Part shown: piece after piece, positions 5,223-35,967 of the stretch | How positions within the stretch are numbered: position 1 is the stretch's first letter | Layout: every line of letters starts with the position of its first letter | Assembly: GCF_902459465.1 (NCBI RefSeq) | Contig: NC_047062.1 | Location: 13,702,001-13,766,000, forward strand | Source of the DNA: Asterias rubens | Lineage: Eukaryota | Reading direction: 5' to 3' | DNA length: 64,000 nt | The notes under the pieces: model-generated | Told to the model about the DNA's origin: nothing | The model's input: only the letters and a program-made list of their open reading frames with translations | Database searches by the model: none | Position numbers and translations under genes: made by a program

Positions 5223-8200
5223 TTATGGTTGGCCTAAATCTTCTTCGTAATGGTCTTTTCCCAAAATTTCTTCAGCTTCCGTGCCGACTTTGTTATCATC
5301 GGCACAGCAAACAATAGCCATGCGGTACAACTGCAGCATGATGACCAGGAAGTTCTTGAAAAGAAAGAACAACATCATCTGGTTTCTTATATTGAACTCA
5401 ATCAAAAGGTAAAGTCTCATAGCCAAGAATGGCCCGTCTTGCATTAAGATAGTGATCCAGAGAGCCCAGATTTCATTCTCGCAACATCCTAAGCATCCCG
5501 TGCAAGATTTGCCCCCAGAGATCTTAGCTGGCATGGCTCTCGGGGCAGACACCATGGTGAGGACCAGGGTGAACTGAAGCAAGCTCCAGCTCCATATGCC
5601 CAGCATCAAAATAATCAAGAAAAGGTTACAGGTAACCGCTTGCTCCAGCAATGTCTCAAAGGAGAACTCCAAGATGTCAGCCGCCATACCGATGTACACC
5701 AGGAGGAGTTGTGAGAGCTGGTCACGTGTGAGGGCGCCCTTGGGGAGGAGCCATCTTCCCAGGAGAAGAACAGCAAGAAGGAATTGCTCCAAGGCCAAGC
5801 TCCAAGAGTCGTCTGTTAGAGTAACTGGTATGTTAATCTGCATCTGCAGTCACAACAATACACAAATAATTATTAGAGAAGTTTACACACCGTGCTGCGT
5901 TAAAGTATCCTACACTTTATTATAAACTCTCCGGTCAGAATATTGGTTGTGTAATTGAGTGTATTTTTGGTCCGGATCTCTAAATCATTCCCTGGCATCT
6001 TATTGTTTAATACCACGCTTCCCTTTTATTCACCCCTTTCAAGCTGAGCCAGTCTGTTTTTGCCACGTCCGTTCTACAACCTTGTCATTATAAAGTATCA
6101 AAGTTTTCCTCCTGAGCTCATCTTCGCAATTTTCTGAACATCAAATTGTGCTGTCAACATTGCCATGTTCGTGGTGTCATCACACTCTTTGATTACCACG
6201 TAATATTGAAAACCACCTTAGTATCAGAAAATTATTGAAAGGTACATCGATCCTATAAGCCTTATTTCTATACCATCCGCCCGGGTAATAGTTAAAGGCA
6301 GTGGTCACTATTGGTAATTACTCAAAATAATTATTGTCATAAAAACCTTTCTTGATTACGAGTATAAAACATTGTGAGAAACAGCTCCCTCTGAAGTGAC
6401 GTAGTTTTCGAGAAAAGAGGTTATTTCCACGAATTTTATTTCGAGACCTCAAAATAAGATTTCGATGTCTCAAAATCAAGTATCTGAAAGCCCACAACTT
6501 CGTGTGACAAGGGTGTTTTTTTCTTTCATAGTTATCTCGCAACTTTGACGACTAATTGAGCACAAATTTTCACAGGTTTTTTATTTTATGCATAAGTTGA
6601 AATACACCAAGTGGGAAGACTGGTTTTTGACAATTACCAATAGTGTCAAGTGTCTTTAACCATTGCTTCGTCCTTCGGATGGGACGTAAACCCTTTGGTT
6701 CCATGTGTTGTGTAACCTATGTAAAATAACCCAGTGCACTTTATCGAAGAGAAGGGGGTTCGCCCCGGTGTTCCTGGCTGTGGCTGCTGTATACGCCGTA
6801 GCACCTTGTAAAACATTATGAGGGCCCAATTTCATGGCTCTGCTTACCGCCGAATTTGGCGCTTACGATCGCGATTCCCTGCTTACGTGCAAGCGCAGAA
6901 TTTCTGCGCTAGCCTTGTAAGCGTAGAATGCCTAGTAATGTGAAGTACGGACGCGCAGAAGCCAAAATTCGCCGCTAACCCGTGAAATACGCTTGCCGTA
7001 AGCACAGAATTCCATGCTTCCGTACGTGTCGATTCTGTGCTTACGGTAAGCAGAGCCATGAAATTGGGCCCAGGTGCTATGGTCTCGGAATTCATCATTG
7101 CAGTAACCTATCTTCTGAAAGTTTGTATATACTCAGCGCATTGAATACCTGTACCTTGTTTGATAGATACGTGCGCTATAAAAGATATTATAGTTATTAT
7201 TAATATTATGTGTAGGATTTCTCAAGACTTTGATACAAATGTTTCACAGTACATTTAAGGAAAATAACTATGTCTTACCCCTGATACATCGTGGAAACTC
7301 AGTGAAGATGAATTGTACACTGTTTCAGATGAACAATCTTCTAGGTTCATGTTATCTCGGTAGTCGATCCGTTTTCCATAAAGGTCAAAGTTGAGAAGCC
7401 ACAGCCCGGGCACAACACTGGCGAGGTACAGGAACACACTTGGGCAAAACCTACCAGGAGAGTTGAGAATTACACCTTCAAAAATGTGTCTAATTATTTG
7501 CATTGAACGGACAGATAACCAGGCCTGTATGCTTGGTTTTTGAAAGGGCAAGGGCAGCAAGGCATTTTCTCCTTGGTAAAGAGCATAACGTGATGAAGGT
7601 TAACATTTATATTTTATGCAAAAAATGCAATTAATTGAATTGAATTTAAATTAATTGATGTAAGGAAAGACTGGTTACGTCGTCATTGTGATTCTTCTCT
7701 CTCATCCTGGTTCGGGACTGGCAAATGTTTATATTTATTTACGTAATTCTTTGTTCAACCCCAAATGATTTCATTCAATGTTTGATTTTTGTATCTGTAG
7801 GCTATAATTATTTCCTTCATGTAGGTGTAATTAAACAATCTAGGAACAAACATCAATAAAGGATTTATTAATTATCTTCCTTTCACATATAAATCTGTAG
7901 TTTATCTTTCATTAGTGTCCAAACATTTTATACCACCGCAATCGACGGCCGGACAGAAATATGTAAGCCTTTCTTTGAAAAAAATTCGGTCTATTAATAA
8001 AAGGCGTACATGTTGAATATCGTATGCATACAAAATAAAGATCGGCATTCGACAAAACAAAAGTTCTCCAAAGTCACAAAACCTAGTCCTAAACCAACTG
8101 GGTTTGTTTTTAGGGGGAACAAAAATCATTGTGAATTTTATATTTGAGGTTTTATCAAGTTTACAGGCGTTTCGTCACCAGGAATTTTGTCTCACCAATA

Positions 8201-10572: not shown

Positions 10573-13500
10573 TTATGGTTGGCCTACTTCGACAGCTTGC
10601 TGGGAATCTTCTTCGTTATTGTCTTTTCCCACAATTTCTTCAACGTCGGTGCCGACTTTGTTATCGTCGGCACAGCACACAATAGCCATGCGGTACAACT
10701 GCAGCATGATGACCAGGAAGTTCTTAAGAGTAAAGAACAACATCATCTGATTGATGATATTGTAGTCAATCAAAAGATAGAGCCTCATAGCCAAGAAAGG
10801 CCCGTCTTGCATTACGATGGTGATCCATAAAGCCCAGATTTCATTCTCGCAACATCCGAAACATCCCTTGCAAGATTTGCCCCCAGAGATCTTAGCTGCT
10901 CTAGCTCTCGGGGCAGAAACCGAGGTGAGGACCAGGGTGAACTGAAGCAAGCTCCAGCTCCATAGGCCCAGGATCAAAATAATCAAGAAAAGGTTACAGA
11001 TGACCGCTTGCTCCTTCAATGTCTCCAAGGAAAACTCCAAGATGTCCGCCGCCATACCGATGTACACCAGGAGGAGTTGTGAGAGCTGGTCACGTGTGAG
11101 CGATCCCTTGGGGAGGAGCCATCTTCCCAGGAGAAGAAGAGCAAGAAGGAATTGCTCCAAGGCCAAGCTCCAAGAATCGTCCGTCAGAGCAACTGGTATG
11201 TTTATCTGCAACTGCAGTCACAACAATACACAAATAATTATTAGAGAAGTTTATACACCGTGCTGGGTCAATGTATAGCCTACACTATACTCTCCGGTCA
11301 GAATTGAGAGTTTGAAATTGTTATTTTTGGTCCGGATCTACTATTTATACTATTTCCCGGACATCTTATTGTTTAATACCACGCTTCCCTTTTCTTCACC
11401 CCTTTCAAGCCGAGCCAGTCTGTTTTTGCTCCGTCCGTCTTACAATCTTGTCTTTATAATGTATACAGGTTTTCCTCCTAAGCTCATCTTCAAAATATTC
11501 TGAACATCAAGAAGAGCTGTCAACATTGTAAAATTCTTTGTGTCATCACTCAACGATTAAAAGTGGTAAATCAATCTTAGATTTTGTGAAATGTTATCTT
11601 ATTCCCTGTCCTGTGCCATATACATGTATATATGAAGGCTTTCTCAAGATGTGGGTAAAAATCTTTCACGGTACATTTAAAATAAATGATTGTGTCTTAC
11701 CCCTGATATAGCGTCGGAGCTCAGTGAAGATGAATTGTACACTGTTTCAGATGAACAATCTTCTAGGTTCATCGAATCTCGGTAGTCGATCCGTTTTCCA
11801 TAAAGGTCAAAGTTGAGGAGCCACAGCCCGGGCACAACACTGGCGAGGTACAGGAACACACTCGGGCAAAACCTACCAGGAGAGTTGAGAATTACATCTT
11901 CAAAAATGTGTCTAAATTTACACAATTCTAATTCCATTTTGAACACATGGACAACTATTTATGAGATAAAGGAGCACAATTTTAAGTGTATACCGGCGTT
12001 GCATAACGTGATGGTGATTTACATTTTTGTTTTATGGGGGGAAAAATACAATTATTTAAATTGAATTTAAATTAATTTATGTAAGGAAAGACCGGTTACG
12101 TCGTCATCGTGGAGTCGTGTCTATCATCCTAGCTCGGGAGTGGCAAAGTTTATATTCTTGTTCAACCCATAAATATTTCATTCAACGTATGATTTCTGTA
12201 TAATTGTAGGCTTTTATTTGCTTCGTGTAGTTTTATTTACACTCTCTAGATAAACAAAGAACAACCATCAAATAAAGGTTTATTGATTATCTTCTGTTCA
12301 TCTATACATCTGTATTCTATCTTTCATTTTTTACAAACATTTTACACCAACGCAAACGACGGCTAGACAGAAAAATTTGAGACTTTCTTAAAACTTTGTC
12401 TATAACCCTTTAAACCCTGCACCGCCCGAGTTTGCTGAAATCCAATTTCTCAAGATTCTTGCAGTAAATTACTGGAATCTTAGTTCAAATTTTAAAAGAT
12501 GGCCATGGCTTAATGTGTATGCACAATTTTTTACCCTTTCGGTAATATTTGTATAAAAGTACAAGTTCTCATGGGAACAATAAATGCCTCTCGTTAAACG
12601 GCTACGATAATTTTTATGGCAAATATTTTTGTGCACGGATAAAATGGACACAATAGCTTGTTAAGGCTTTTGTCTGGCTCGATGCTCATACTGATTAAAT
12701 GCGAAGGCGTTAATTTTCGACAATATCATCATAAATGATGAACAGTTTCCTGGTTACTAATGAGCGTTTTATTTTTCGTAAGAGCTATTTCATCATCATT
12801 AGCTTCGACAAGTCAACTGTGAAGGGAGAATTAATAACGATCTATAACAACTAGATATATTAACAAATGCGTAGACCTACTAATGACTATCGAGTTTTCT
12901 TGTGATGTTCCTTTTTTCTACAAACACAAGCTAGCGAGGTTTCCTCGTACCGCATACAGTGTATCGCTATATGCGGCTGGGCGGTACAGTGGCTAAATGG
13001 TTATTGATTATCTTCTGTTCATCTATACATCTGTATTCTATCTTTCATTTTTTCCAAACATTTTACACCAACGCAAACGACGGCTAGACAGAAAAATTTG
13101 AGACTTTCTTAAAATTTTGTCTATAAAACTAAAAGGCGTATACATATTGAATTACGTATGCAATCAAAGTAATGGATTGCATTCGAAAAATTCCGAAAAG
13201 CAACAAGACCTAGTCCAAAACCAATTGGGTTGGTTGTTAAAAAAAACAAATCATTGTGAAATTATTGTGGATTTTATATTCGAGGTTTTATCCAATTTAC
13301 AGAGTCTCGTCACCAGGAACGTTGTCTTACAAATTTGATAATCAAAGAAATAAAGTGGGCATTGTAGTAAACCAACAGAGTACACTTTGTTCCAGCTATC
13401 TTACCATTTCCACTCTCCGTTTTTCGTCACTTTCAACGTTAGTATCATCTCCAATGGTAGAAGACAAATCGGAATGATCAGCAAATAGAACAAGGGGTTC

Positions 13501-16466: not shown

Positions 16467-18800
<2,334 letters not shown>

Positions 18801-24571: not shown

Positions 24572-26203
24572 TTAAAGTTCATTTTGCAGTGGTTCTACAG
24601 CGTTAGTGTCTCCACATCGTACGATGATCATTCGATACAACTGCAAAATAATTACTAAGATGTTCTTGAGGGTAAAGAACAACATCATCTGATTGATGAT
24701 ATTGAACTCAATCAAAAGGTAGAGCCTCATAGCCAAGAACGGCCCGTCTTGCATTAAGATGGTGATCCATAGAGCCCAGATTTCATTCTCGCAACATCCC
24801 AAGCATCCCTTGCAAGATTTGCCCCCAGAGATCTTAGCTGCCCTGGCTCTCGGGGCAGACACAGAGGTGAGGACCAGGGTGAACTGAAGCAAGCTCCAGC
24901 TCCATAGACCCAGGATCAAAATAATCAAGAAAAGGTTACAGATGACCGCTTGCTCCTTCAATGTCTCCAAGGAAAACTCCAAAATGTCAGCCGCCATGCC
25001 GATGTACACAAGGAGGAGTTGTGAGAGCTGGTCACGTGTGAGGGCGCCCTTGGGGAGGAGCCATCTTCCCAGGAGAAGAAGAGCAAGAAGGAATTGCTCC
25101 AGGGCCAAGCTCCATGAATCGTCTGACAAGGCAAGTGGAACTACAACCTGGAACTGAGAGGATACACCGTCAAAAACAAAAATCCATATGATTGCAGTTC
25201 ACACTGTTGTACTCAATATAGTAAATTTTAAAATTATAATTCTCTTCGCAACTCAAAGTACAAAGTTTAAAAACATCTTGGATAGTAGTGCTCCCCTTTA
25301 AAATATAGAGAACACAATGTTACGGTGATAAGCTTTCTGTGGTAACTTCATGCTTAAGTGTCTTAATTAGTAAGTCAAAACGTATATACACTTTGGGGAA
25401 TGCAAAGAGGAACTGGTTTGAATTTGCCAGGAAAGTGCACCCCAAGAAAAGGATGGAGCACCCAATGTGACCGCCCTTGTGGCCCTTTCGTCGCTGCTAA
25501 ACGTTTCTAAAGTACCGTACATGCAACGAAAGGTTTCTTGTTGAACTAAAAAAGTTTAAGTTCCATATGTAAACTTACCCCAGCTACGTCAGCACTGACT
25601 AAAGATTCATTATAAGCGGTGTCCGTTGAACAATCTTCCCAGCCCATCGAGTCTCTATACTCAATCCTCTTTTCGTAAATGTCGAAGTTCAGAAACCAAA
25701 TTCCAGGCACAACGCTGCTCAGATACAGGAACACACTTGGACAAAACCTTGGAACATTAATTAGAAAACGTACAATACAGTTTTACTGGGGGTTTGGAGA
25801 AAATTAATACACGATACCGCGTCACTGAGTCGCATAACTTTGAGGAACAATTACAGTTTGTTTTAACAGTTCTGGGAAACTATTTAAATCATGACCACTA
25901 CGATGACAAAATGTATGTTTTGATTGAATCAATTTGTATAAATTGTACATTATCTCATGCTTCATCTATTATTTATATATGACAAGGGTAGTAAACATAG
26001 AAACGTTCTTACCATTTCCACTCTCCGTCGTCCGTTAATTTTAGCGTCAGTATCATCTCCAATGGTAGAAGACAAACCGGAATGATCAGCAAATAGTACA
26101 AGGGGTCCAAATTGATGTCCGTAACTCGCCACACGGTGATGATGCCGTGGATTGCGAAGAGAGACCGGGCCAGAAGGGCCTTGAAAAGGGACACCCATCC
26201 CAT
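24572..26203 (-). CDS. TMEM26: TMEM26-like copy F, intact, 3 exons (26203-26013, 25747-25579, 25153-24572), 313 aa
   Basis: 191+169+582 = 942 nt in frame, canonical GT-AG sites, same family motifs. Confidence 0.92.
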
Positions 26204-27017
26204 TATCGGAGTTCCGCAATGTGAAATCCTCTCATCAGTTCAGCAGCCGCAATTAGGCCTAGTCGCTTATGGTGTCGGCGTATAACAATGTGCAATGCCT
26301 TTTTGTGTTGTACTGTTATTCAACTTATCACAGACAAAAAATACCCCCCATAAACCTTATACTAGAGCCGCTTTTAAAAACGTTGATTTTGTATGGGTTT
26401 TAGTCTGTACGCGTACCGGTATTGAACTTGTCTCACTTCGAGTGGCATGGCCGTAAACAAGTCCCGTTTCTTAGCAATAAGTAGTAAAAACCAGTAGTAC
26501 AATAAGAGAGTAACTTGGTAACACGTACAATGACGGTAAACACCCTATTCACCCAAACAAATCAAGTATTCAACCGTGACCGTGAACTTGCTAACCACAT
26601 GAAACCATGAAGCTGATTGAATATTATTTGATTTATTTGTATCTTATCATTGTGAGAAAAGTGATGAAAGGGAAAATTGCAATTTAAAGGCAGAGGACAC
26701 TATTGGTAACTACTCAACGAAAGTCCACGTTCACCATTGTTAGCATAAAAACTTAATTGGTAATCAAGAATCTGAAAGCACACAACTTCGTGTGACAAGG
26801 GTGTTACGTGAATCAATAATTACAATCATAAGCCATGAATTTGTTTTCTAAATTATCAGCAAAATGTCTCGTAATTAATGAGAAACGTTTTGACAATAGA
26901 TGCAGACGATCCGTCCATGAAACTGTGCTCCTGGGCGCACAACAATTTAAGAAATTATCGTTTGCAGTACCCGCTGCTAAACAATAGGATTCGAACTGCC
27001 TCTAGCTACCGGGCAAT

Positions 27018-27160
27018 CTCGGTGGTCTAGTTGGTATGACACTGCTCTAGAATTGCAAGGGTCGTGGGTTCGAATCCCACCCGAGTAAAATGCCTGTGAT
27101 TTTTTCACAGGACTCGGGGAAAGGACATCAGTGTATATGGGTAAAACCAAAAATTAATAT
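27018..27160 (+). mobile_element. tRNA-derived SINE
   Basis: A box TGGTCTAGTTGG, B box GGTTCGAATCC, CTCGG/CCGAG stem, non-canonical anticodon arm, and a tail (tgcctgtgattttt...actcggg...) shared with the inverted copy at 37285-37423. Confidence 0.8.
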
Positions 27161-27849
27161 AATTTAAGAAATATTACAAATTTATAAGAAAATACAGTTA
27201 GAAAGTATAGGCCTAGTCGGTACCTGTACACTTAACCAAGTGAACCGAAACCACCATTAATTATTTAATTTCAATGAATTAAGTACACATAAAGAGACCC
27301 ATTACACAGCAAATCTGTTCAAGCGAATAGTGGAGCAGTTTTGGGAAATATTTGGGGAAGTACCATTAGTTTATCGTGACTTTGCATCTGGTATTATATG
27401 CTAAGTTCAAAGGACAAATACCTATTCCCCGCCACACTCTTTACACTGTGTGCCAAATTGCATATACCTGTGTCATCCTATGTCGTGCGCAAAGAGCTAT
27501 TATTTATGTCTGCGGTGGTGCTTGGGGAAACCCCACCACTGTAGGGAATTTCCATAGAATCCCTTGAATTGGATAAATACAATGGGTTGGCCATGCGGTT
27601 TGTCACAACGATTTCAACACAAATTGCAACACCATTATTACAGCACTGGGTCTGGTTCTCCTCAATGTGTGGCTCATATGGGATAATTTGATATGAATAT
27701 TTCATTTGTTAATTAGTGCCTATACTCTTTTTGTTTGTACCTGTTTCCAAGCAACCGTTGGGCCTAAAATGACGTACATTCTACCAAAACATTTACACGG
27801 ACGACACTGAAAAAGCAGCTTCCGGGATCCACACAGTATATTAATTAAG

Positions 27850-30800
27850 ATGGCGCGGCGGGAGATTCGTGAATGCACTCCGGTGCAGGAGAGCAAAACC
27901 CAACACATCTCAGCTTTTGTCAGATCAAATGGCTTTTATGCAACTACCGATCTACCGTTCAGAGTCACGAAAGAGACCAACTGGGACTGTCTAAGCGATG
28001 AGGTAATATCAAAATAAATAAATATAATACTGTTTGTGTTTTAAGCCTATCCACGTGTGCATTTTCCTAGTGTATTTTTTTATTATCAGATATACACCCA
28101 AAAGACTTGCCGTTGCGCACAAAAACAGATTGATTTTATTTTGCGAGGTGTTTGCACTCTCTTAGAATTTAGTATGGAAATATTAACTGCTATGCGGGGC
28201 ACAGTTAAAATTATAGGCCCAAGGTGATGTAAACACCATGAGGGCGAAGCTGAGGGAATAGCCATGGTTGTGAAATCACCGAGGGCCTATAATTTTAACT
28301 GTGCCCCGATTACTAAGCAGTCAATATTTATTTTGTATACCGAATAAAGATTCCTGTAATCAACAAAACTGACAAAGGTGAAAGGTCGTCTGCGAAGAAA
28401 GGAGTCGCGACGTGACACGGAACGTCGTATGTACCATAATCATTATCAGTACACACGAACAACCTATTTGCGACCGTTGTTTTCAGGGCGGGCATAGTAT
28501 AGTCGATTGACTATGCCTTGGGCATAGTCAACTATGACGTCATCTTAATAGAAAAGCGGGCATAGACTCCATTTTTAACCAATCGGATTAGAGGATTCTA
28601 TAAATGAGGTATATTTTAAATTATATTGTTTAACTAGGCAACGTCGACTATTTTATTGTAGAGAGTTGAGCAACCTCGTTAAATGTGATGGGAGTGAACA
28701 CGATTTCTGGGTTGTGCGGTCATTGATGAAGAATGTGATAGGCTTACCGCACTGTAGCGGTGGAATGAAGATGGCTGTCCATTATAAGAAAAAAACATTA
28801 TCTCATTTTTTTTTGATAAAAAAAATTGCCGGATACTTCCCCAGGTGAGGCTCGAACTCACAACCTTTGCATATCCTCACAGCAACGCGTTTGGTTACTG
28901 TCTATAAGTACAACGCGCTAACCGATTGTGCTACCGGGGACGACATGGATGTGAACCACCACTCTTGAGTCTTGAGTCAAGTAATCCCTGTAGCAGTTCT
29001 CGAAGGAAACTTAAATGGGATGGTGCATCAGGTTCCGTCACTGGTCAAAATGTGCAAGTGAAGGTGAACTAATGTTTAATGGATGTGCAAGTAAACAGCA
29101 CAAGTGATTTACAGGAGCCTTGAAAACCATTCACATGTTATTTATGGACTTTCATATTTTTTTTGTGTATTCTATGGGATTCTTCTATGGGGGGGCCCGT
29201 TTGTTTGAAGTGGGCGTGGCTGACACGAACAAGAATGGGCGTTATAGGGCCTGCGCCAAACACTGGCACGTCGAGCTGTGTCATTCATTAATGACAAAAT
29301 CATAACGATAATATTCCGAATTATTCGACAATAATGTCCAATATGTCCAATGGTGTTAAATGGCGTTATTTGTTTTGTTTTTAAGCCGGAGCCATGCCAA
29401 AGTTGGGTTTCGAAAACGGCCAGTCAGGAATGACGTCAGAATGAATTTGGCTAATTGTGGTAGTGGGAATATTGTGGTGATAACGGTGTTTGGAATTGTG
29501 AGTGAACGGGACTGAATGAAGACGTGAAAACACTTCATTTCTTTATCACAAGGTTTTTCCCTCTGTGTTTATATAAAGATCTTCAAGACAATTCATGACA
29601 TCTCTCTGTCCGATTGCAAGCTGTCGACAGTTCCTCTTGCGGTTGCATCCATGACGCAACTAACCCGGCTCTACCTGACGTACAACGATATGTCCAAGCT
29701 ACCTAAAGAATTCGCTGACCTGATCAATCTTCAAATCTTGAATCTTGGATTTAATTCATTCAAGGAAATCCCAGATGTGGTGTTTGAGTTGAGGGAGCTG
29801 AAAGTGTTGTACTTGAAGAACAACTCAATCACATCTGATGGAGTAGGTGAGGACGTGGAGACCAAACTGAAAACGGAATTGTTTGTAGGTCTTACTCAAA
29901 TCCCCACCATTTTTCGAATTCACATGGGATACATGTAGATTTAAAGGCAGTGGACACTATTGGTAATTATACTCAAAATAATTATTAGCATAAAACCTTT
30001 CTTGGTGATGAGTAATGGAGAGAGGTTGATGGTATAAAACATTGTGAGAAACGGCTCCCTCTGAAAAGTCATAGTTTTCGAGAAAGAAGTAATTTTCCAC
30101 GAATTTGATTTCGAGACCTCAGATTTAGAACTTGAGGTGTCGAAATCAACCATCTAAACGCACACAACTTCGTCTGACAAGGGTGTTTTTTCTTTCACTA
30201 TTATCTCGCAAGTTCGATGACCGATTGAGCTCAAATTTTCACAGGTTTGTTATTTTATGCATATGTTGAGATACACCAACTGTGAAGGCTAGTCTTTGAC
30301 AATTACCAATAGTGTTCACTGCCTTTAATATAAATAAGTGTAAACATGAACATTTTCTCAAACTGTGGCGCCCTCTTTTGAAATGTTGAACTGACGTGCA
30401 CATGTGCCCTTTTGGACACATCGCTAGTGTTTGTCGCAGTGGTAGCGCATTCTAACAGCTCTTCTGCAACTCTCGCGATACTGCCGTTGTCTTTGGAGAC
30501 TTCTCTCTCGTAAGACTACTGCTCTCGTGCGAAAACTACTGCCCCATTTAAAGGAAATGGACACTTGGTAATTTTCCAAAATAATTGTTAGCATAAAACT
30601 TACTGGACGGGCAATGGAAAGCTGTTGATTGTATAATACATTGTAAGTAACGTCTACCTCTGAAATAACGTTTTTTGAGGAAAAGGTAATTTCTCACTCA
30701 AATTACAAGGCTTGAAGCCTCTTTTTAGATATCTGGAAGCATATACACAAATGGCAACCAGGCAGCTTCAACTTCGATGACTAATTGAGCCACAATTTTC

Positions 30801-33800
30801 ACAGGTTTGTTGTTTGAATGCATGTGTTGGGATACACCAAGTGAGGGTATACTGGTCTTTGACAATTACCCAAAGTGTCCGTGGTTAAGAGAGCCGTAGT
30901 CGCGATCTCTCCGGAGAGCAGTCTCGCGAGACCACCGTCGTGAAATTCGCGGAGAGGGTCGATTCGGTACGCTATCGCCGCCACTTTTCCACCAATCTAA
31001 CGTTCTCTTAAAATAGCCTTGTTTCAGGGTATCATTTTTGTTGATGCATTTCAGGTCCTCATTTACAGAATTTGATAAATCTTGAAGAACTATATCTTGG
31101 AAACAACCAACTGAAAACGTTTCCTGAGTCAGCCTGCAAATTGAAGGAAATTCGCCTTCTCTCTCTCTCCAGCAATAGGATAAGGGAGGTTCCACCCACT
31201 ATCAAGGAAATGAAGGTATGACTAAACCGGTATTCGTCGATGAGCCCTTTTCATAGCATTTGCTGTAAAACAAAACAAAAACAGGTTTCCTACCAACCCA
31301 TGAGGCACCCTTTTTGACTGATCTGCAGTTTCCGTGCGCGTCACTTGATTGTCAAGGTTATCATTCGGCCATTAAAAAGCCTGTTTTATTCCGTGCCGTC
31401 TCTCAGCCAAGGTACAGTGTGTTACCTGCAATTGTGCTGTACTGGACAAGTGTCATGATCTGGATTTGAACCAAAACCCTGCTAACTTGCCGAACAAAAC
31501 TGTCGTCCAGTTTACTGAACACTCGACAATTCTCAGTCATGAGAAGGTACACTTTATTTGACGCACTGAACCTTTCGACTGAGAAAATCGCAATTGAGGT
31601 TTATTTGGTATAGTTATATGCGCACCTTTCCTTCGTTGAAATAATTATTGGTTTTTATTCCATCGATACTCAGACGTTTTGTTTAGGTATTTGCTGCACG
31701 TATATTTGCTGGCAACTTATAGGGCAACGAAAATCAACAAGGAGCACTTTTGATAGCAAACTCTATACATCCCTTCAGAAAATTGATGTGAAAACGTTGA
31801 AATGTGGATGGCTTTTCATCATAGAGATTGCCTGAAACATTTTTTGCATGTTAGATTTGAATAATGTCCGGTACAATGACGTGCTTGATCACCCCGGTTA
31901 AACTTGAATTCATCAGACTGTATAAGAGACAGTTGCTATGTCACACGATTCGGTGCAAGATTTGCGTAGTTACGTAAGAGACGATGAAGATCCAGTACAC
32001 AATTCTGAATGGGTGTGTATTGGACAATGGTACCAGGGTTGGCTCATCTGGAGGTTGATATACAAAAGCTTGCCAGGAACCATTTTTAAATGCATACTTA
32101 TTTTGCTTTAGTCTGAGGAATTCAAATGTAGCGGTAGGTGTGACTATTAAAAACAAGTCATTGTACCAGACATTTTCAAATCTAACTGGCAAATGACTTA
32201 TTACCTCGTGGGTTATGGCCGCACTCCTTCCTCCTCATTGTTTTTTCACTTGAAAAGAATCTGACGGTCCTAACCATGCGCTCCAATCGACTGCAACGTG
32301 TTCCCGGTGTGATCGGTGGCCTAACATCTTTGGAATCGTTATGCTTTGCTCAAAACATGATCACGGTTTTTCCATTTGAAAAGGTACGTTGTCTCAAAGC
32401 ACTGGACACGCTTGGTAACTCAAAATATGATTTATTTGGTAACGAGCAACGAAGAGCTATATTGCTATGAAACATTGTGAGAAACAACTTCCTTTGAAGT
32501 TTTTGAGAGAGGGGTAATTTCTCACTCAAAAATTTGGTTCTGAAAAAGACTTCAGGCTTGAAGCCTTTCTCGAGCATCTGAAAGCACATAATGGGTGTTT
32601 TCTTTTCCCGTTTGTCACATTTTTTAAAATTGAATTCGCAGGTTGGGATACACTAAGTGAAAATACTGGTATTTGAGATTTTATTTTACCAAACGTTTCC
32701 AGTGCGTTTAATATGTTCTCTCTTTTAGCAAATTTTCGTTTCGAAACAGATATTATTACAGGAACCTTGGGTGATGCTTGATGTTCGCTTTGCTTTATAT
32801 AACTTCTTACATTATGAGATGTTCGTATATTTTCATGGGTATTATGGTATTATTGTTACCATTACCGTCTACTGAATAGAATATCGGATACAGTTACACT
32901 TTTTGTATGATATTACCAAATTCTGGCCCAACCTATAAGCCTAAATGGTATTTTTTGTCAACTTGGACACAGTGATCATCTTTTTATCACATTTTTTAAC
33001 AGCTTAACAAACTCCAAAAGCTGCGTGATTTATGTTTGCATGGCAATCGACTTGACGATGGAGAAATCCTTGAAAACATGAGTACGAAACTCGCTGAGCG
33101 TGAATGCATGCTACGAGCCGAAGAAAATAGAGTTGCCCTGCCCAGACGAGGTGGTGAGTGAATTGTTTATCGTCCCATCCCTTCTCTCAGAACCGAATCT
33201 CCTAAAAGTTGTCAACACCTACTTGTTTACAAACTACAAAGAACGAAAACGTGTCTGCAAACAAGTAGTCTTGGCCCAAGACCTCAGTAATTGATTTGGG
33301 CCACTGTACTTACTGCGCTCGGTTGTAAATCGTTACAGCGCGCCCTCTTGCGGCAAAATTTAACCAGCTTGATTGGCTCTCCAGTCGAGTCTGTTGCAGT
33401 ACATAACACTATCCACTATCGATCACTAACTTCTTGGTCCAAGACTAACATTTATCGAGCTCTGAAATTATTAAATAATTATATTTCCCTTTTCAACTAC
33501 CTGAGAGACCTTGCAATCCATTTTGAGGTAAATAAATAAATACAAATACAGCTGATTTTTTATTTTTTTCCAAAATTGAGAATTCCTAGATCACAATCAC
33601 TTCTTCTCTTCGAAAAGATTAAAGGAACACGTTGCCTTGGATCGGTCGAGTTGGTCTTTAAAAAGCGTTTGTAACCGTTTGTTACATAGAATGCATATGA
33701 TGAGAAATATATTTTAAAAGTAGAACATAATGATCCACACAAATATGCCTCGAAATGGCTGTCGACCGTGTTAGTTTGCAAAGCAAAAGGAAAACCACGC

Positions 33801-35352
33801 AGTTTCAAAGCATATTCTACTTTTAAAACATCTTTCCAACCATATGAATTTCATAACAAACGGTTACAAACGCTTAGACCAACTCGTCCGATCCAAGGCA
33901 ACGTGTTCCTTTAACTTATTTGTTTTTTCCTCAGTGGTTTTATCAAGTTTGGGTTTTGTATTCGTTCGTTCCAGGTGTTTGTGACGGCGTTTTCAAGGTG
34001 TGGCATAAAGACTTTTTGTGGATTCATGATGGTGGTAAATCAGTGACTACGTGGATTGGTGAAGTGTCAGAACTACTGAAAACGAAACAACTCTCGTCAA
34101 AGGTAAACCAATTGTTTCGACTATTGTAACAAGACTTTGGAATTGTATCTGTTTTTGAAATAAGCTTGGCGCATGAATATTTTGTGGATGAACATTGATC
34201 CAATGAAATCGTTGTATCAAATGAAACTCTGGGGACAGTCTAGGGTGTGTATAGCCCGATGCAGGCACTGGCGTTTTGCGTGGCTGATGCAGACAATAAC
34301 CGCGATCTCAAGTCCAATCTCAATTTAAATCAACAGCCAATCGGAATATGTTTAGTTATTAAAGGCAGTCGGCACTATTGGTAATTAATCAAAATAATTA
34401 TCAGCATAAAACCTTACTTGGTAACAATTAATGGGGAGAGGTTGATAGTATGAACATTGTGAGAAACGGCTCCCTCTGGACGTAGTTTTTGAGAAAGAAG
34501 TAATTTTCCACGAATTTGATTTCGAGACCTGAAGTTTAGAATTTGAGGTCTCAAAATCAAGCATCTGAAAGCACACAACTTCGTGTGACAAGGGTGTTTT
34601 TTCTTTCATAGTTATCTCGCAACTCCGACGACCAATCAAGCTCAAATTTTCCCAGGTTTGTTATTTGTGCATAATGTAGAGATACACAAGTGCGAAGACT
34701 AGTCTTTGACAATGGGAGACTTTCTGGGACGATAGAGGGCAGCAGACTTACCGGGTAAATCCATTGTTCTCAGAATTATGCGCATGTTCAGAACTACGTA
34801 AACAATGAAAATTTACCCGGTATGTCTGCTGCCACCTAGCGTTGGAAAGTCTCCTATTACCAATAGTGTCCACTGTCTTTAATAGCAAATTAATTGTACA
34901 TAACACAATCTGTGTCGTTATAAGGACACAATGTTTTTAAACAAGACCTAGGGTTTTATGTTCCCTTGTTTATGTTTTCTTTCTCTTGAAAGGATTGCAA
35001 TGTAGGTCTCTCATCTCAAGACATGACCAGCGCAAAAGATTATTCCAACACCAGTCGTGTGGTGTGTGTGGTCTGCACTCAGGAAATGTGTGACCTTCTC
35101 AAAGATGAGACGAATAGTACAGCCAAGATAGTTAAAAGTGTGATAGAATATCGTGCGTCTTCCTCCGTTTCAGTCATTTTTGACAAAACATGTTATATAG
35201 CCCAGATGCTTTTTCGTCTCACAAACCGTGATAACATCATTTGCAGACATGAGAGCAATAACAAGAACGACACGTTTTGTAAAGAGCTTATCAAACTGAT
35301 GGTTCAAATCATTGGACAAAGGATGGGACCGTTATGCCATGGCAGGCATTAA
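27850..35352 (+). CDS. Leucine-rich-repeat protein with C-terminal TIR-like domain, about 448 aa, 7 exons (27850-28002, 29579-29846, 31055-31215, 32258-32383, 33003-33153, 33975-34102, 34993-35352)
   Basis: Exon lengths 153+268+161+126+151+128+360 = 1347 nt. All six junctions are GT-AG and phase-matched (0,1,0,0,1,0). Start context AAGATGGCG. About 9 LxxLxLxxNxLxxLP repeats (e.g. LTRLYLTYNDMSKLP, LQILNLGFNSFKEIP, LEELYLGNNQLKTFP, IRLLSLSSNRIREVP). The LRR exons are secure; exon 1 and the last two exons are inferred from frame and splice compatibility. Confidence 0.78.
28178..28329. repeat. Long inverted repeat (probable DNA-transposon end or MITE)
   Basis: Perfect 26-bp arms 28195-28220 / 28283-28308 plus outer arms 28178-28191 / 28316-28329. 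Confidence 0.75.
28837..28940 (-). tRNA. tRNA-Ile(TAT): tRNA-Ile(TAT) with 30-nt intron (28873-28902)
   Basis: Acceptor stem TCCCCGG/CTGGGGA, A box TAGCACAATCGG, anticodon arm TTGTA-CTTATA[intron]A-TGCAA, T arm GTGAG-TTCGAGC-CTCAC, intron after position 37, oligo-T terminator about 12 nt downstream. One A-C mismatch in the D stem. Confidence 0.88.
29945..30324. mobile_element. TTAA MITE, main family, LRR gene intron 2
   Basis: Full TIRs, TTAA on both sides, 380 bp. Confidence 0.88.
30552..31007. mobile_element. Two abutting TTAA elements (30552-30884 main-family variant; 30889-31007 GAGA...TCTC type)
   Basis: TTAA at 30548, 30885 and 31008; second element has GAGAGCCGTAG / CTAACGTTCTC ends. 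Confidence 0.6.
32396..32711. mobile_element. Degenerate main-family MITE, LRR gene intron 4
   Basis: actggacacgcttggtaa...aaacgtttccagtgcgtttaa with family internal motifs. Confidence 0.65.
33623..33910. mobile_element. AGGAACACG-type TTAA MITE
   Basis: About 35-bp TIR AGGAACACGTTGCCTTGGATCGGTCGAGTTGGTCT with one mismatch; TTAA on both sides. Confidence 0.88.
34363..34878. mobile_element. Main-family TTAA MITE with nested 142-bp AT-TSD MITE (34714-34855)
   Basis: Host empty site GACAATTACC appears as GACAAT-[GGGAGAC...GTCTCCT]-ATTACC. Confidence 0.85.
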
Positions 35353-35967
35353 AGACAGCGAACCAGCGCGTGTAGATTTAAGTATTTTGGGTGTACCGCT
35401 GACACGTTTGTTGAGGGGAACTGGACAATAAATACTTCTACTTTAAGGGGAGGATGGGGGTCAATGAGGGGGTCAAACAATTTTTTACTCAACAGCAGTT
35501 TTTTTTAGTTGTAACTTTACCCCTTCAGTGCCTAATCATGTTCAACAATTTTTAGTATTTGTATATCTTTACATATTTTTGTATAAGAAATTGGTTTTAA
35601 AGTAATAATAATAGAATGGCATTTCCATGAACCAGAGAGTATACAATATCTCGGGGTACATCGTCTTTTGCTGCAAAACCGGAAAGGTCCCGGACTTAAA
35701 AACAGCAGCATTTGTCACACACTCTTACTAACATTATACTGTTGGTACTGGTACTATAGGTGGGTCGGCGCACTTTTGGGTTACCCGCTCACTTTTATTT
35801 TGGTGAAAAGGGAGAAGACTATTAACATCAATTTCATAAAGTTGCAAATGATTGCTTACAATTGTTCTGTTTGCCGAAATGAGCAGGCCACCAGTCACAC
35901 ATTGGACATTATTGTGACATGCAATAATTTTTTCATTATAGCCTGCCTTCGTTTTGAGTAGCTTTAA

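What the first reader, a model, noticed from the sequence alone, without database searches (positions are those of the whole stretch)
27850..35352. Hidden cytosolic LRR + TIR-like protein with no signal peptide or transmembrane segment
Seen: seven exons join in frame to about 448 aa with a charged N-terminus (MARREIRECTPVQESK), about 9 LRRs, and no hydrophobic span anywhere. The last two exons give DFLWIH-(VTTWIGEVSELLKTK)-...-(SAKDYSNT)-RVVCVVCT-(QEMCDLL...KIVKSVIEY)-SVSVIF-(YIAQMLFRL)-NIICRH-(DTFCKELIKLMVQII), an alternating 5-strand/5-helix pattern. Known: this is the TIR/SEFIR flavodoxin-like topology, and by recall it parallels the BCAP/BANK1-type TIR (DILIxYS...EEWCQYL...SAEDL...RCVVVLLSAEL). 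Inference: a TLR-like sensor lacking its membrane anchor, or an NLR-like receptor lacking NACHT, i.e. an unusual intracellular immune or signalling architecture. I could not place a catalytic NADase glutamate.
Basis: partly seen in the sequence, partly recalled or inferred. Interest (0 to 1): 0.82.

Follow-up and report, generated by a model that had tools for sequence, protein, structure and literature searches.

The report
Soluble starfish LRR protein, orphan tail
This is a real, transcribed starfish gene for a soluble 448-residue protein with nine SHOC2-type leucine-rich repeats and a roughly 160-residue tail domain that matches nothing known; the proposed TIR identity of the tail found no support in any sequence test and could not be tested by structure.

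Summary
Seven GT-AG exons (27850-35352, + strand) join in frame to 448 aa. There are nine 23-25-residue LRRs and no hydrophobic span (maximum Kyte-Doolittle 19-residue mean 1.03). A 2005-nt RNA contig of the same species joins exons 2-7 exactly as proposed, and a sister species does the same for exons 3-7. So transcripts do not stop at the TGA after exon 5.

In a more distant relative (L001), exons 4-6 form one open frame, and dN/dS is 0.22 for the LRRs and 0.37 for the tail.

The TIR reading is not supported so far:
- The LRRs are of the cytoplasmic SHOC2/LRRD1/RSU1 type, not the TLR or NLR type.
- Exons 6 and 7 hit no TIR, SEFIR, DBB or GTPase model at E<=10 in Pfam, PADLOC or NCBIfam, and nothing in the PDB.
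- A TcpC-family TIR profile scores the joined tail at -0.4 bits, and hhalign gives 0.4 %.
- Among 1.84 billion representative proteins, exon 7 finds only two fragments of the same gene.

AlphaFold on the two referenceable pieces was unusable (pLDDT 37-40). The joined domain could not be submitted, so the fold is still open.

The parts
27715..27849 (+). probable 5' UTR
   Evidence: RNA contig X2/record 8 has 288 nt ahead of exon 2. All sampled words of 27715-28002 are held by RNA runs X1 and X2. There is an in-frame stop upstream of the ATG. Colinearity is inferred.
27850..28002 (+). exon 1: ATG and 51 charged or polar N-terminal residues, no Pfam match
   Evidence: donor GAG|gtaata
29579..29846 (+). 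exon 2: LRR 1-4 (residues 52-140)
   Evidence: Pfam LRR_8 at 2.5e-14. The best PDB relatives are SHOC2 at 3.7e-50, with LRRD1 and RSU1 further down the list. RNA contig pieces cover 29577-29844.
31055..31215 (+). exon 3: LRR 5-6
   Evidence: Pfam LRR_4 at 5e-12; joined to exons 2 and 4 in X2/record 8 and X3/record 13
32258..32383 (+). exon 4: LRR 7-8
   Evidence: fused to exons 5 and 6 in one open frame in relative L001:226-630
33003..33153 (+). exon 5: LRR 9 and a charged helical linker; donor GTG|gtgagt lies just ahead of the in-frame TGA
33975..34102 (+). exon 6: start of the C-terminal domain (residues 287-329), with the first hydrophobic strand-like run DFLWIH and a helix-like segment
   Evidence: Joined to exons 5 and 7 in RNA contigs of two species. 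83 % identical to L001, with dN/dS 0.34. No family hit.
34993..35352 (+). exon 7: rest of the C-terminal domain (residues 330-448) and the TAA stop
   Evidence: Among 1.84e9 representatives only P0001 and P0002 are relatives. No Pfam, PADLOC, NCBIfam or PDB hit. dN/dS versus L001 is 0.27-0.41.
35353..35873 (+). 3' UTR (the end is approximate)
   Evidence: X2/record 8 runs 473 nt beyond 35400. The 3' end is inferred by assuming colinearity. The only AATAAA is at 35427.

Best explanation
This is an expressed, spliced, lineage-restricted starfish gene for a soluble cytoplasmic protein of 448 residues. It has a short polar N-terminus and nine SHOC2-type LRRs, which would form a curved solenoid used as a protein-binding surface. 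A charged linker helix follows, then a compact domain of about 160 residues that has no detectable relative outside this gene.

The most likely mode of action is that of other cytoplasmic 'Ras-group' LRR proteins such as SHOC2, RSU1 and LRRD1. The LRR arc would hold a partner protein. The C-terminal domain would add a second, lineage-specific interaction or assembly surface.

Shown: the gene model, its transcription, the LRR type, the absence of a membrane span, conservation of the tail as coding sequence, and the lack of any sequence-level TIR signal. Inferred: cytoplasmic location, the scaffold function, and the alpha/beta nature of the tail.
For: - Gene model and reading frame.
- Spliced RNA contigs in two species joining exons 2-7 and 3-7.
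- Exon 1 region held by the same RNA runs.
- Nine LRRs, closest to SHOC2, LRRD1, RSU1 and LRRC8.
- Maximum hydropathy 1.03.
- In relative L001, exons 4-6 are one open frame, with the same intron 6 position.
- dN/dS is 0.22 for the LRRs and 0.37 for the tail at dS about 0.44.
- The hydrophobic strand-like runs are conserved between the two species: DFLWIH/DVLWIH, CNVGL/CSVGL, VVCVVCT in both, SVSVIF/SISVIF, NIICRH/NIIIRY.
- The tail has no relatives in 1.84e9 representative proteins other than two fragments of this same gene, in a collection whose sources include nr and UniRef.
- No TIR, SEFIR, DBB, Roc or Ras hit.
Against: No function was tested, and no partner or expression context is known.

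The tail's fold is unknown. AlphaFold on the pieces failed, with pLDDT 39.8 and 36.5. The LRR part of the second model was also poor, so the failure says nothing either way.

Between the window species and its sister species, the listed coding differences are 15 nonsynonymous against 5 synonymous codons. The L001 contig has a 1-nt frameshift in exon 7. Constraint on the tail may therefore be weak or changing.

The sequence tests for TIR used split pieces, a narrow bacterial profile and a two-sequence query. A cryptic TIR would escape them.
Confidence: 0.55

Rival explanations
1. One reading: the C-terminal domain is a cryptic TIR-like (flavodoxin-like) signalling domain. The protein would then be a soluble LRR-TIR sensor or adaptor that signals by TIR-TIR assembly, probably without NADase activity.
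For: The order of conserved hydrophobic runs and helix-like segments fits strand-helix repeated five times in about 160 residues.

By eye, DFLWIH sits where TIR box 1 would be. S-RVVCVVCT followed by ..MC.. resembles the strand C/helix C region. F-C-K-E-L lies eight residues after the last strand, where box 3 (FW..L) would be. That comparison is from memory and is a lead, not a test.

TIR proteins are greatly expanded and shuffled into new architectures in echinoderms and amphioxus (PMC2858798, PMC2575513). Another window of this genome holds multi-TIR genes (earlier finding s1-150100).
Against: - No TIR, TIR_2, TIR_3, TIR-like, SEFIR or DBB match at E<=10 on exon 6 or on exon 7, which holds about 75 % of the domain.
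- No match to PADLOC TIR models.
- No PDB hit.
- The TcpC-family HMM scores -0.4 bits on the joined domain, and hhalign gives 0.4 %.
- There is no RD..PG-type BB-loop motif and no placeable catalytic Glu.
- The LRRs are not of the TLR type.
Confidence: 0.22
2. The tail is a degenerate, truncated Ras/Roc-like G domain, that is, a pseudo-GTPase. The gene would be a cut-down relative of the LRR-Roc (ROCO/MFHAS1-type) architecture, the one known case where this LRR type is directly followed by an alpha/beta domain.
For: In the window sequence a hydrophobic strand is followed by D-G-G-K-S and a helix, which is P-loop-like. N-K-N-D lies 112 residues later, after the last strand, which is close to the G1-G4 spacing of Ras. 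VVCVVCT-QE lies where hhhhDTAGQE would be. All three are read from the sequence.
Against: The motifs are not conserved. L001 has GGES and lacks the NK. The sister species has N418E and K420N. There is no Pfam Ras, Roc, Arf or COR hit at E<=10. One strand-helix unit (strand 6 and helix 5) would be missing. No GTPase profile was run against the joined domain.
Confidence: 0.1
3. The tail is a young or decaying lineage-specific extension without a stable fold or specific function, and the protein works as an LRR-only scaffold.
For: It is an orphan in 1.84e9 representatives. The window versus sister-species differences are about neutral, at 15 nonsynonymous to 5 synonymous. There is a frameshift in L001 exon 7. 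Both AlphaFold models have low confidence.
Against: dN/dS is 0.37 over 138 codons against L001, with the hydrophobic runs kept. The downstream frame in L001 is still 67 % identical after the 1-nt shift, which points to an assembly error or a very recent change. Exons 6 and 7 are retained and spliced in two species. AlphaFold also failed on the undoubted LRR part, so low pLDDT is uninformative here.
Confidence: 0.1

Closest known systems
SHOC2 and other cytoplasmic 'Ras-group' LRR proteins (RSU1, LRRD1, the LRRC8 C-terminal LRR)
   Same: Same repeat type (23-24 residues, LxxLxLxxNxLxxLP). SHOC2 chains are the best PDB matches to exon 2 (E 3.7e-50), followed by LRRD1, RSU1 and LRRC8. All are soluble or cytoplasmic, with no signal peptide.
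   Different: There are only nine repeats, against about 20 in SHOC2. Orthology was not tested. None of these proteins carries this C-terminal domain.
TIR-domain proteins (TLRs; the cryptic N-terminal TIR of BCAP/BANK1; TcpC)
   Same: Domain size and a plausible strand-helix alternation. LRR plus TIR is the TLR combination.
   Different: No signal peptide, LRR caps or membrane span. No sequence match to any TIR model or to a TcpC-family profile. The LRR type differs from TLRs. The fold was not established.
ROCO proteins (MFHAS1, LRRK1/2): LRR directly followed by a Roc GTPase
   Same: A cytoplasmic LRR of the same general type is followed at once by an alpha/beta domain. The window sequence has P-loop-like and NKxD-like strings at Ras-like spacing.
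   Different: The motifs are not conserved in relatives. There is no COR domain and no Pfam Roc or Ras match. The domain is one strand-helix unit too short.
PIDD1 / LRRD1 (LRR plus death-fold domains)
   Same: A soluble LRR followed by a signalling or assembly module. LRRD1 is among the best LRR matches.
   Different: No ZU5, UPA or Death match. The tail looks alpha/beta, not all-helical.

Membership tests
TIR domain superfamily (Pfam TIR, TIR_2, TIR_3, TIR-like, SEFIR; DBB-associated TIR) | Significant match to a TIR-family profile | tested here: not met
   Pfam at E<=10 gave no hit for exon 6 (42 aa) or exon 7 (119 aa). PADLOC and NCBIfam gave none. An HMM of 120 TcpC-family TIR domains scored the joined residues 287-448 at -0.4 bits, and hhalign gave 0.4 %. 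Caveats: the pieces were split at the intron, the bacterial profile is narrow, and the query alignment has only two sequences.
TIR domain superfamily | Flavodoxin-like fold with a five-stranded parallel sheet (strand order 2-1-3-4-5) flanked by helices | tested here: inconclusive
   AlphaFold on exon 7 alone gave pLDDT 39.8. On the L001 exon 4-6 piece it gave pLDDT 36.5. Both models are unusable. The joined domain has no reference and was not submitted.
TIR domain superfamily | Box 1, box 2 (BB loop, RD..PG) and box 3 (FW) motifs; a catalytic Glu for NADase members | tested here: inconclusive
   By eye there are box-1-like DFLWIH and box-3-like FCKEL strings, both conserved in L001. There is no BB-loop motif and no placeable Glu. 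The motif definitions come from memory.
Toll-like receptors | Signal peptide, capped ectodomain LRRs, and one membrane span ahead of the TIR | tested here: not met
   Maximum 19-residue hydropathy is 1.03. The N-terminus is charged, with an in-frame stop upstream. The LRRs match SHOC2-type repeats.
NLR / NACHT-LRR receptors | NACHT or NB-ARC NTPase domain with RI-type LRRs | tested here: not met
   No NACHT or NB-ARC hit in any exon. The repeats are 23-25 residues and of SHOC2 type.
Cytoplasmic SHOC2/RSU1-type LRR proteins | Tandem 23-24-residue LxxLxLxxNxLxxLP repeats in a protein without a secretion signal | tested here: met
   Nine repeats. Pfam LRR_8, LRR_4 and LRR_1 hits. SHOC2 is the best PDB match at E 3.7e-50. 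No hydrophobic span.
ROCO (LRR-Roc-COR) | Roc G domain with conserved G1, G3 and G4 motifs, followed by COR | tested here: not met
   No Roc, Ras or COR hit. GGKS becomes GGES and NKND is lost in L001. K420N in the sister species. The protein ends 27 residues after the NKND string.

The most novel reading that the evidence does not exclude
The tail is a cryptic TIR-like or other flavodoxin-like assembly domain found only in sea stars, fused to a SHOC2-type LRR arc. That would make a soluble LRR-plus-signalling-domain receptor or adaptor with no counterpart in vertebrates. Two surface codons (397 and 418) vary within and between species, which could point to host-pathogen conflict.
Probability: 0.2. 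Interest if true: 0.65.

Novelty: new variant of a known kind. Interest (0 to 1): 0.35.

Why it matters
Echinoderms have very large, shuffled innate-immune gene sets, and soluble LRR proteins with new effector modules are candidates for unknown sensing or signalling routes. This gene is real and expressed. Its tail was absent from a protein collection that includes nr and UniRef, so it may be missing from, or truncated in, public annotation. If the tail proved to be a TIR-like module, it would add a membrane-free LRR-TIR design to animal immunity. If not, it is a lineage-specific domain of unknown fold on an ordinary scaffold, of modest interest.

Tried and rejected
1. **Folding pieces.** AlphaFold on exon 7 with its three available relatives gave pLDDT 39.8. 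AlphaFold on the L001 exon 4-6 piece gave pLDDT 36.5. Neither was passed to fold search, because matches to such models are meaningless.

2. **Looking for a spliced cDNA or an annotated protein, to get a reference for the joined domain.**
   - The representative search found only two genomic-ORF fragments.
   - Their clusters have one member each.
   - The contig encoding P0001 is genomic eDNA.
   - The metagenome scan gave one genomic contig, L001, which keeps intron 6.
   - The joined exon 6+7 protein was therefore never given to Pfam, AlphaFold or Atlas.

3. **ESM Atlas feature search on exon 7.** The best score was 0.66, which is uninformative.

4. **P-loop GTPase idea** (DGGKS, NKND). Rejected as a functional reading because neither Lys is conserved.

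5. **P0003**, a plant glycosyltransferase-like repeat protein (E 8e-4 over four repeated stretches). Treated as a chance hit.

6. **Paralogues.** There is none in the window. Neighbouring ORFs are TMEM26-like or unassigned, so there is no immune-gene cluster context.

7. **Earlier notes of this scan.** None at this place, and none describing a similar LRR gene.
Full report
**What is there**

Reading 27500-35800 and joining the proposed exons in a script gives seven exons with canonical GT-AG borders: 27850-28002, 29579-29846, 31055-31215, 32258-32383, 33003-33153, 33975-34102 and 34993-35352. They total 1347 nt, or 448 codons and a TAA stop.

A pattern scan finds nine LRR units of 23-25 residues starting at residues 56 to 243. 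Pfam LRR_8, LRR_4 and LRR_1 hit exons 2-4. The highest 19-residue Kyte-Doolittle mean is 1.03 and lies inside an LRR. The N-terminus is charged, and an in-frame stop lies 14 codons upstream of the ATG. By these measures there is no signal peptide or membrane span.

**Is the model transcribed as proposed?**

Yes. Contigs of four RNA-labelled runs were laid on 29500-35400. One 2005-nt contig of the window's species (X2, record 8) lies on exons 2, 3, 4, 5, 6 and 7 with consecutive record coordinates: 289-556, 557-716, 717-843, 844-995, 996-1120 and 1121-1532. A 1064-nt contig of a sister species (X3, record 13, about 3 % diverged) does the same for exons 3-7.

Record 8 has 288 nt ahead of exon 2. 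The 288 nt at 27715-28002 (exon 1 plus a presumed 5' UTR) are held 100 % by the same RNA runs. The exon 1-2 junction is therefore well supported but not directly seen.

**Relatives**

A phmmer search with exon 7 against 1.84 billion representative proteins found three hits:
- P0001: the same exon from an environmental DNA contig of the same species (L002, genomic).
- P0002: the same exon from contig JACSEG010017374.1 (L001, 65-68 % identity).
- A repeated plant glycosyltransferase-like protein, which I treat as chance.

The underlying collection includes nr and UniRef (the sources column). The tail therefore seems absent from annotated proteins in that collection.

L001 is informative. There, exons 4, 5 and 6 are one uninterrupted open frame (L001:226-630), which independently confirms the exon 5-6 join. 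Intron 6 is at the same place, and exon 7 has a 1-nt frameshift near L001:1573-1576, after which the other frame stays 67 % identical.

Nei-Gojobori dN/dS between the window and L001 is 0.22 for exons 4-5 (LRRs and linker) and 0.37 for exons 6-7, at dS about 0.44. The tail is coding sequence under moderate constraint, and its hydrophobic runs are kept.

**What the LRRs are**

Exon 2 matches SHOC2 best in the PDB (E 3.7e-50), then Leptospira LRR proteins, LRRD1, plant receptor kinases, LRRC8 and RSU1. These are the 23-24-residue repeats typical of cytoplasmic scaffolds. They are not the capped ectodomain repeats of TLRs or the RI-type repeats of NLRs. 'A TLR without its anchor or an NLR without NACHT' is therefore not a good description.

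**What the tail is**

Every sequence test was negative:
- Pfam at E<=10 gave nothing for exons 1, 5, 6 or 7. That covers TIR, TIR_2, TIR_3, SEFIR, DBB, Ras and Roc.
- PADLOC and NCBIfam gave only noise.
- PDB searches with the sequence and with a small profile gave nothing.
- ESM Atlas features peaked at 0.66.

To test the joined domain, which the tools cannot take by reference, I built a TIR profile inside the script sandbox. TcpC was located in E. coli CFT073, and 120 homologues of its TIR domain were fetched. An HMM of these scored the joined residues 287-448 at -0.4 bits, and hhalign gave 0.4 % probability. This is a narrow bacterial profile against a two-sequence query. It argues against an ordinary TIR but not against a cryptic one.

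**Structure**

AlphaFold on exon 7 with its few relatives gave pLDDT 39.8. On the L001 exon 4-6 piece it gave pLDDT 36.5, poor even over the LRRs. The failures therefore say nothing about the fold. The joined exon 6+7 chain was not submitted because it has no reference, and I followed the rule against typing long sequences.

A simple hydrophobicity analysis shows three clear buried-strand-like runs (FLWIH, VVCVVC, VSVIF) and modest helical amphipathicity, with z 1.2-1.9. This is compatible with an alpha/beta sandwich but does not prove one.

**A rival noticed on the way**

The window sequence has a strand followed by DGGKS and a helix. It also has NKND 112 residues later, after the last strand, which resembles the G1 and G4 motifs of Ras/Roc at about the right spacing. 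LRR-Roc is a known architecture. However, L001 has GGES and lacks the NK, the sister species has K420N, nothing matches Ras or Roc in Pfam, and one strand-helix unit would be missing. At most this is a dead, truncated G-domain remnant.

**Evolutionary rate**

Twenty-one of the 29 differences in the sister-species contig are listed. They fall in 15 nonsynonymous and 5 synonymous codons, which is roughly neutral.

Codons 397 and 418 differ within the species (Y/N and N/V: window versus L002 and X2) and again between species (D and E in the sister species, Q at 397 in L001). This may be diversifying selection or simply loose loops, and the counts are small.

**Context**

Four TMEM26-like ORFs lie upstream on the minus strand. 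No family was found downstream, and there is no paralogue in the window. Papers PMC2858798 and PMC2575513 document the expansion and domain shuffling of TIR proteins in sea urchin and amphioxus. That keeps the TIR reading plausible a priori.

**Verdict**

The gene is a real, expressed, soluble SHOC2-type LRR protein with an orphan C-terminal domain. The TIR label is untested at the level of fold and unsupported at the level of sequence. My estimates are about 0.2 for TIR-like, 0.1 for a Ras/Roc remnant, 0.1 for a non-domain, and the remainder for an unclassified lineage-specific alpha/beta domain acting as a second interaction module.

Noticed in passing
window 32384-33002 and 33154-33974, compared with L001:226-630: Introns 4 and 5 of the window gene are absent from the related species' contig, where exons 4-6 are one open frame. 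Intron 6 is shared. With two species, loss and gain cannot be told apart.
   Followed up: partly
window 33619-33914 (inside intron 5): A 296-nt near-palindromic MITE-like element begins and ends with TTAA. Its arms are 39 nt (97 % complementary), with nested arms of 22 and 39 nt. It has very high depth and many contig ends at 33619 in the RNA runs. It lies in one of the two introns missing from L001.
   Followed up: partly
window 29945-30330, 30550-30870, 32400-32670, 34345-34880: Copies of one dispersed repeat family lie in introns 2, 4 and 6, with summed word depth of 1e5-4e6 in RNA-labelled runs of two species. This looks like an abundant, transcribed SINE-like element.
   Followed up: no
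window codons 397 (35193-35195) and 418 (35256-35258): Two codons of the tail carry different amino acids in nearly every sample. Codon 397 is Y/N within the species, D in the sister species and Q in L001. Codon 418 is N/V within the species and E in the sister species.
   Followed up: partly
L001:1573-1576: There is a one-base frameshift in exon 7 of the relative, and the downstream frame is still 67 % identical. It is either an assembly error or a very recent inactivation.
   Followed up: no
window 5223-5843, 10573-11211, 16467-16835, 24572-25129 (minus strand): Four tandem ORFs match the C-terminal half of Pfam Tmem26 (E 1e-29 to 4e-61). This is a local TMEM26-like gene array just upstream of the LRR gene.
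   Followed up: no
window 27016-27088 and 28195-28308: A tRNA-Ser(AGA) gene lies about 760 bp upstream of the start codon. A 46-nt inverted repeat (87 % complementary, 22-nt loop) lies in intron 1.
   Followed up: no
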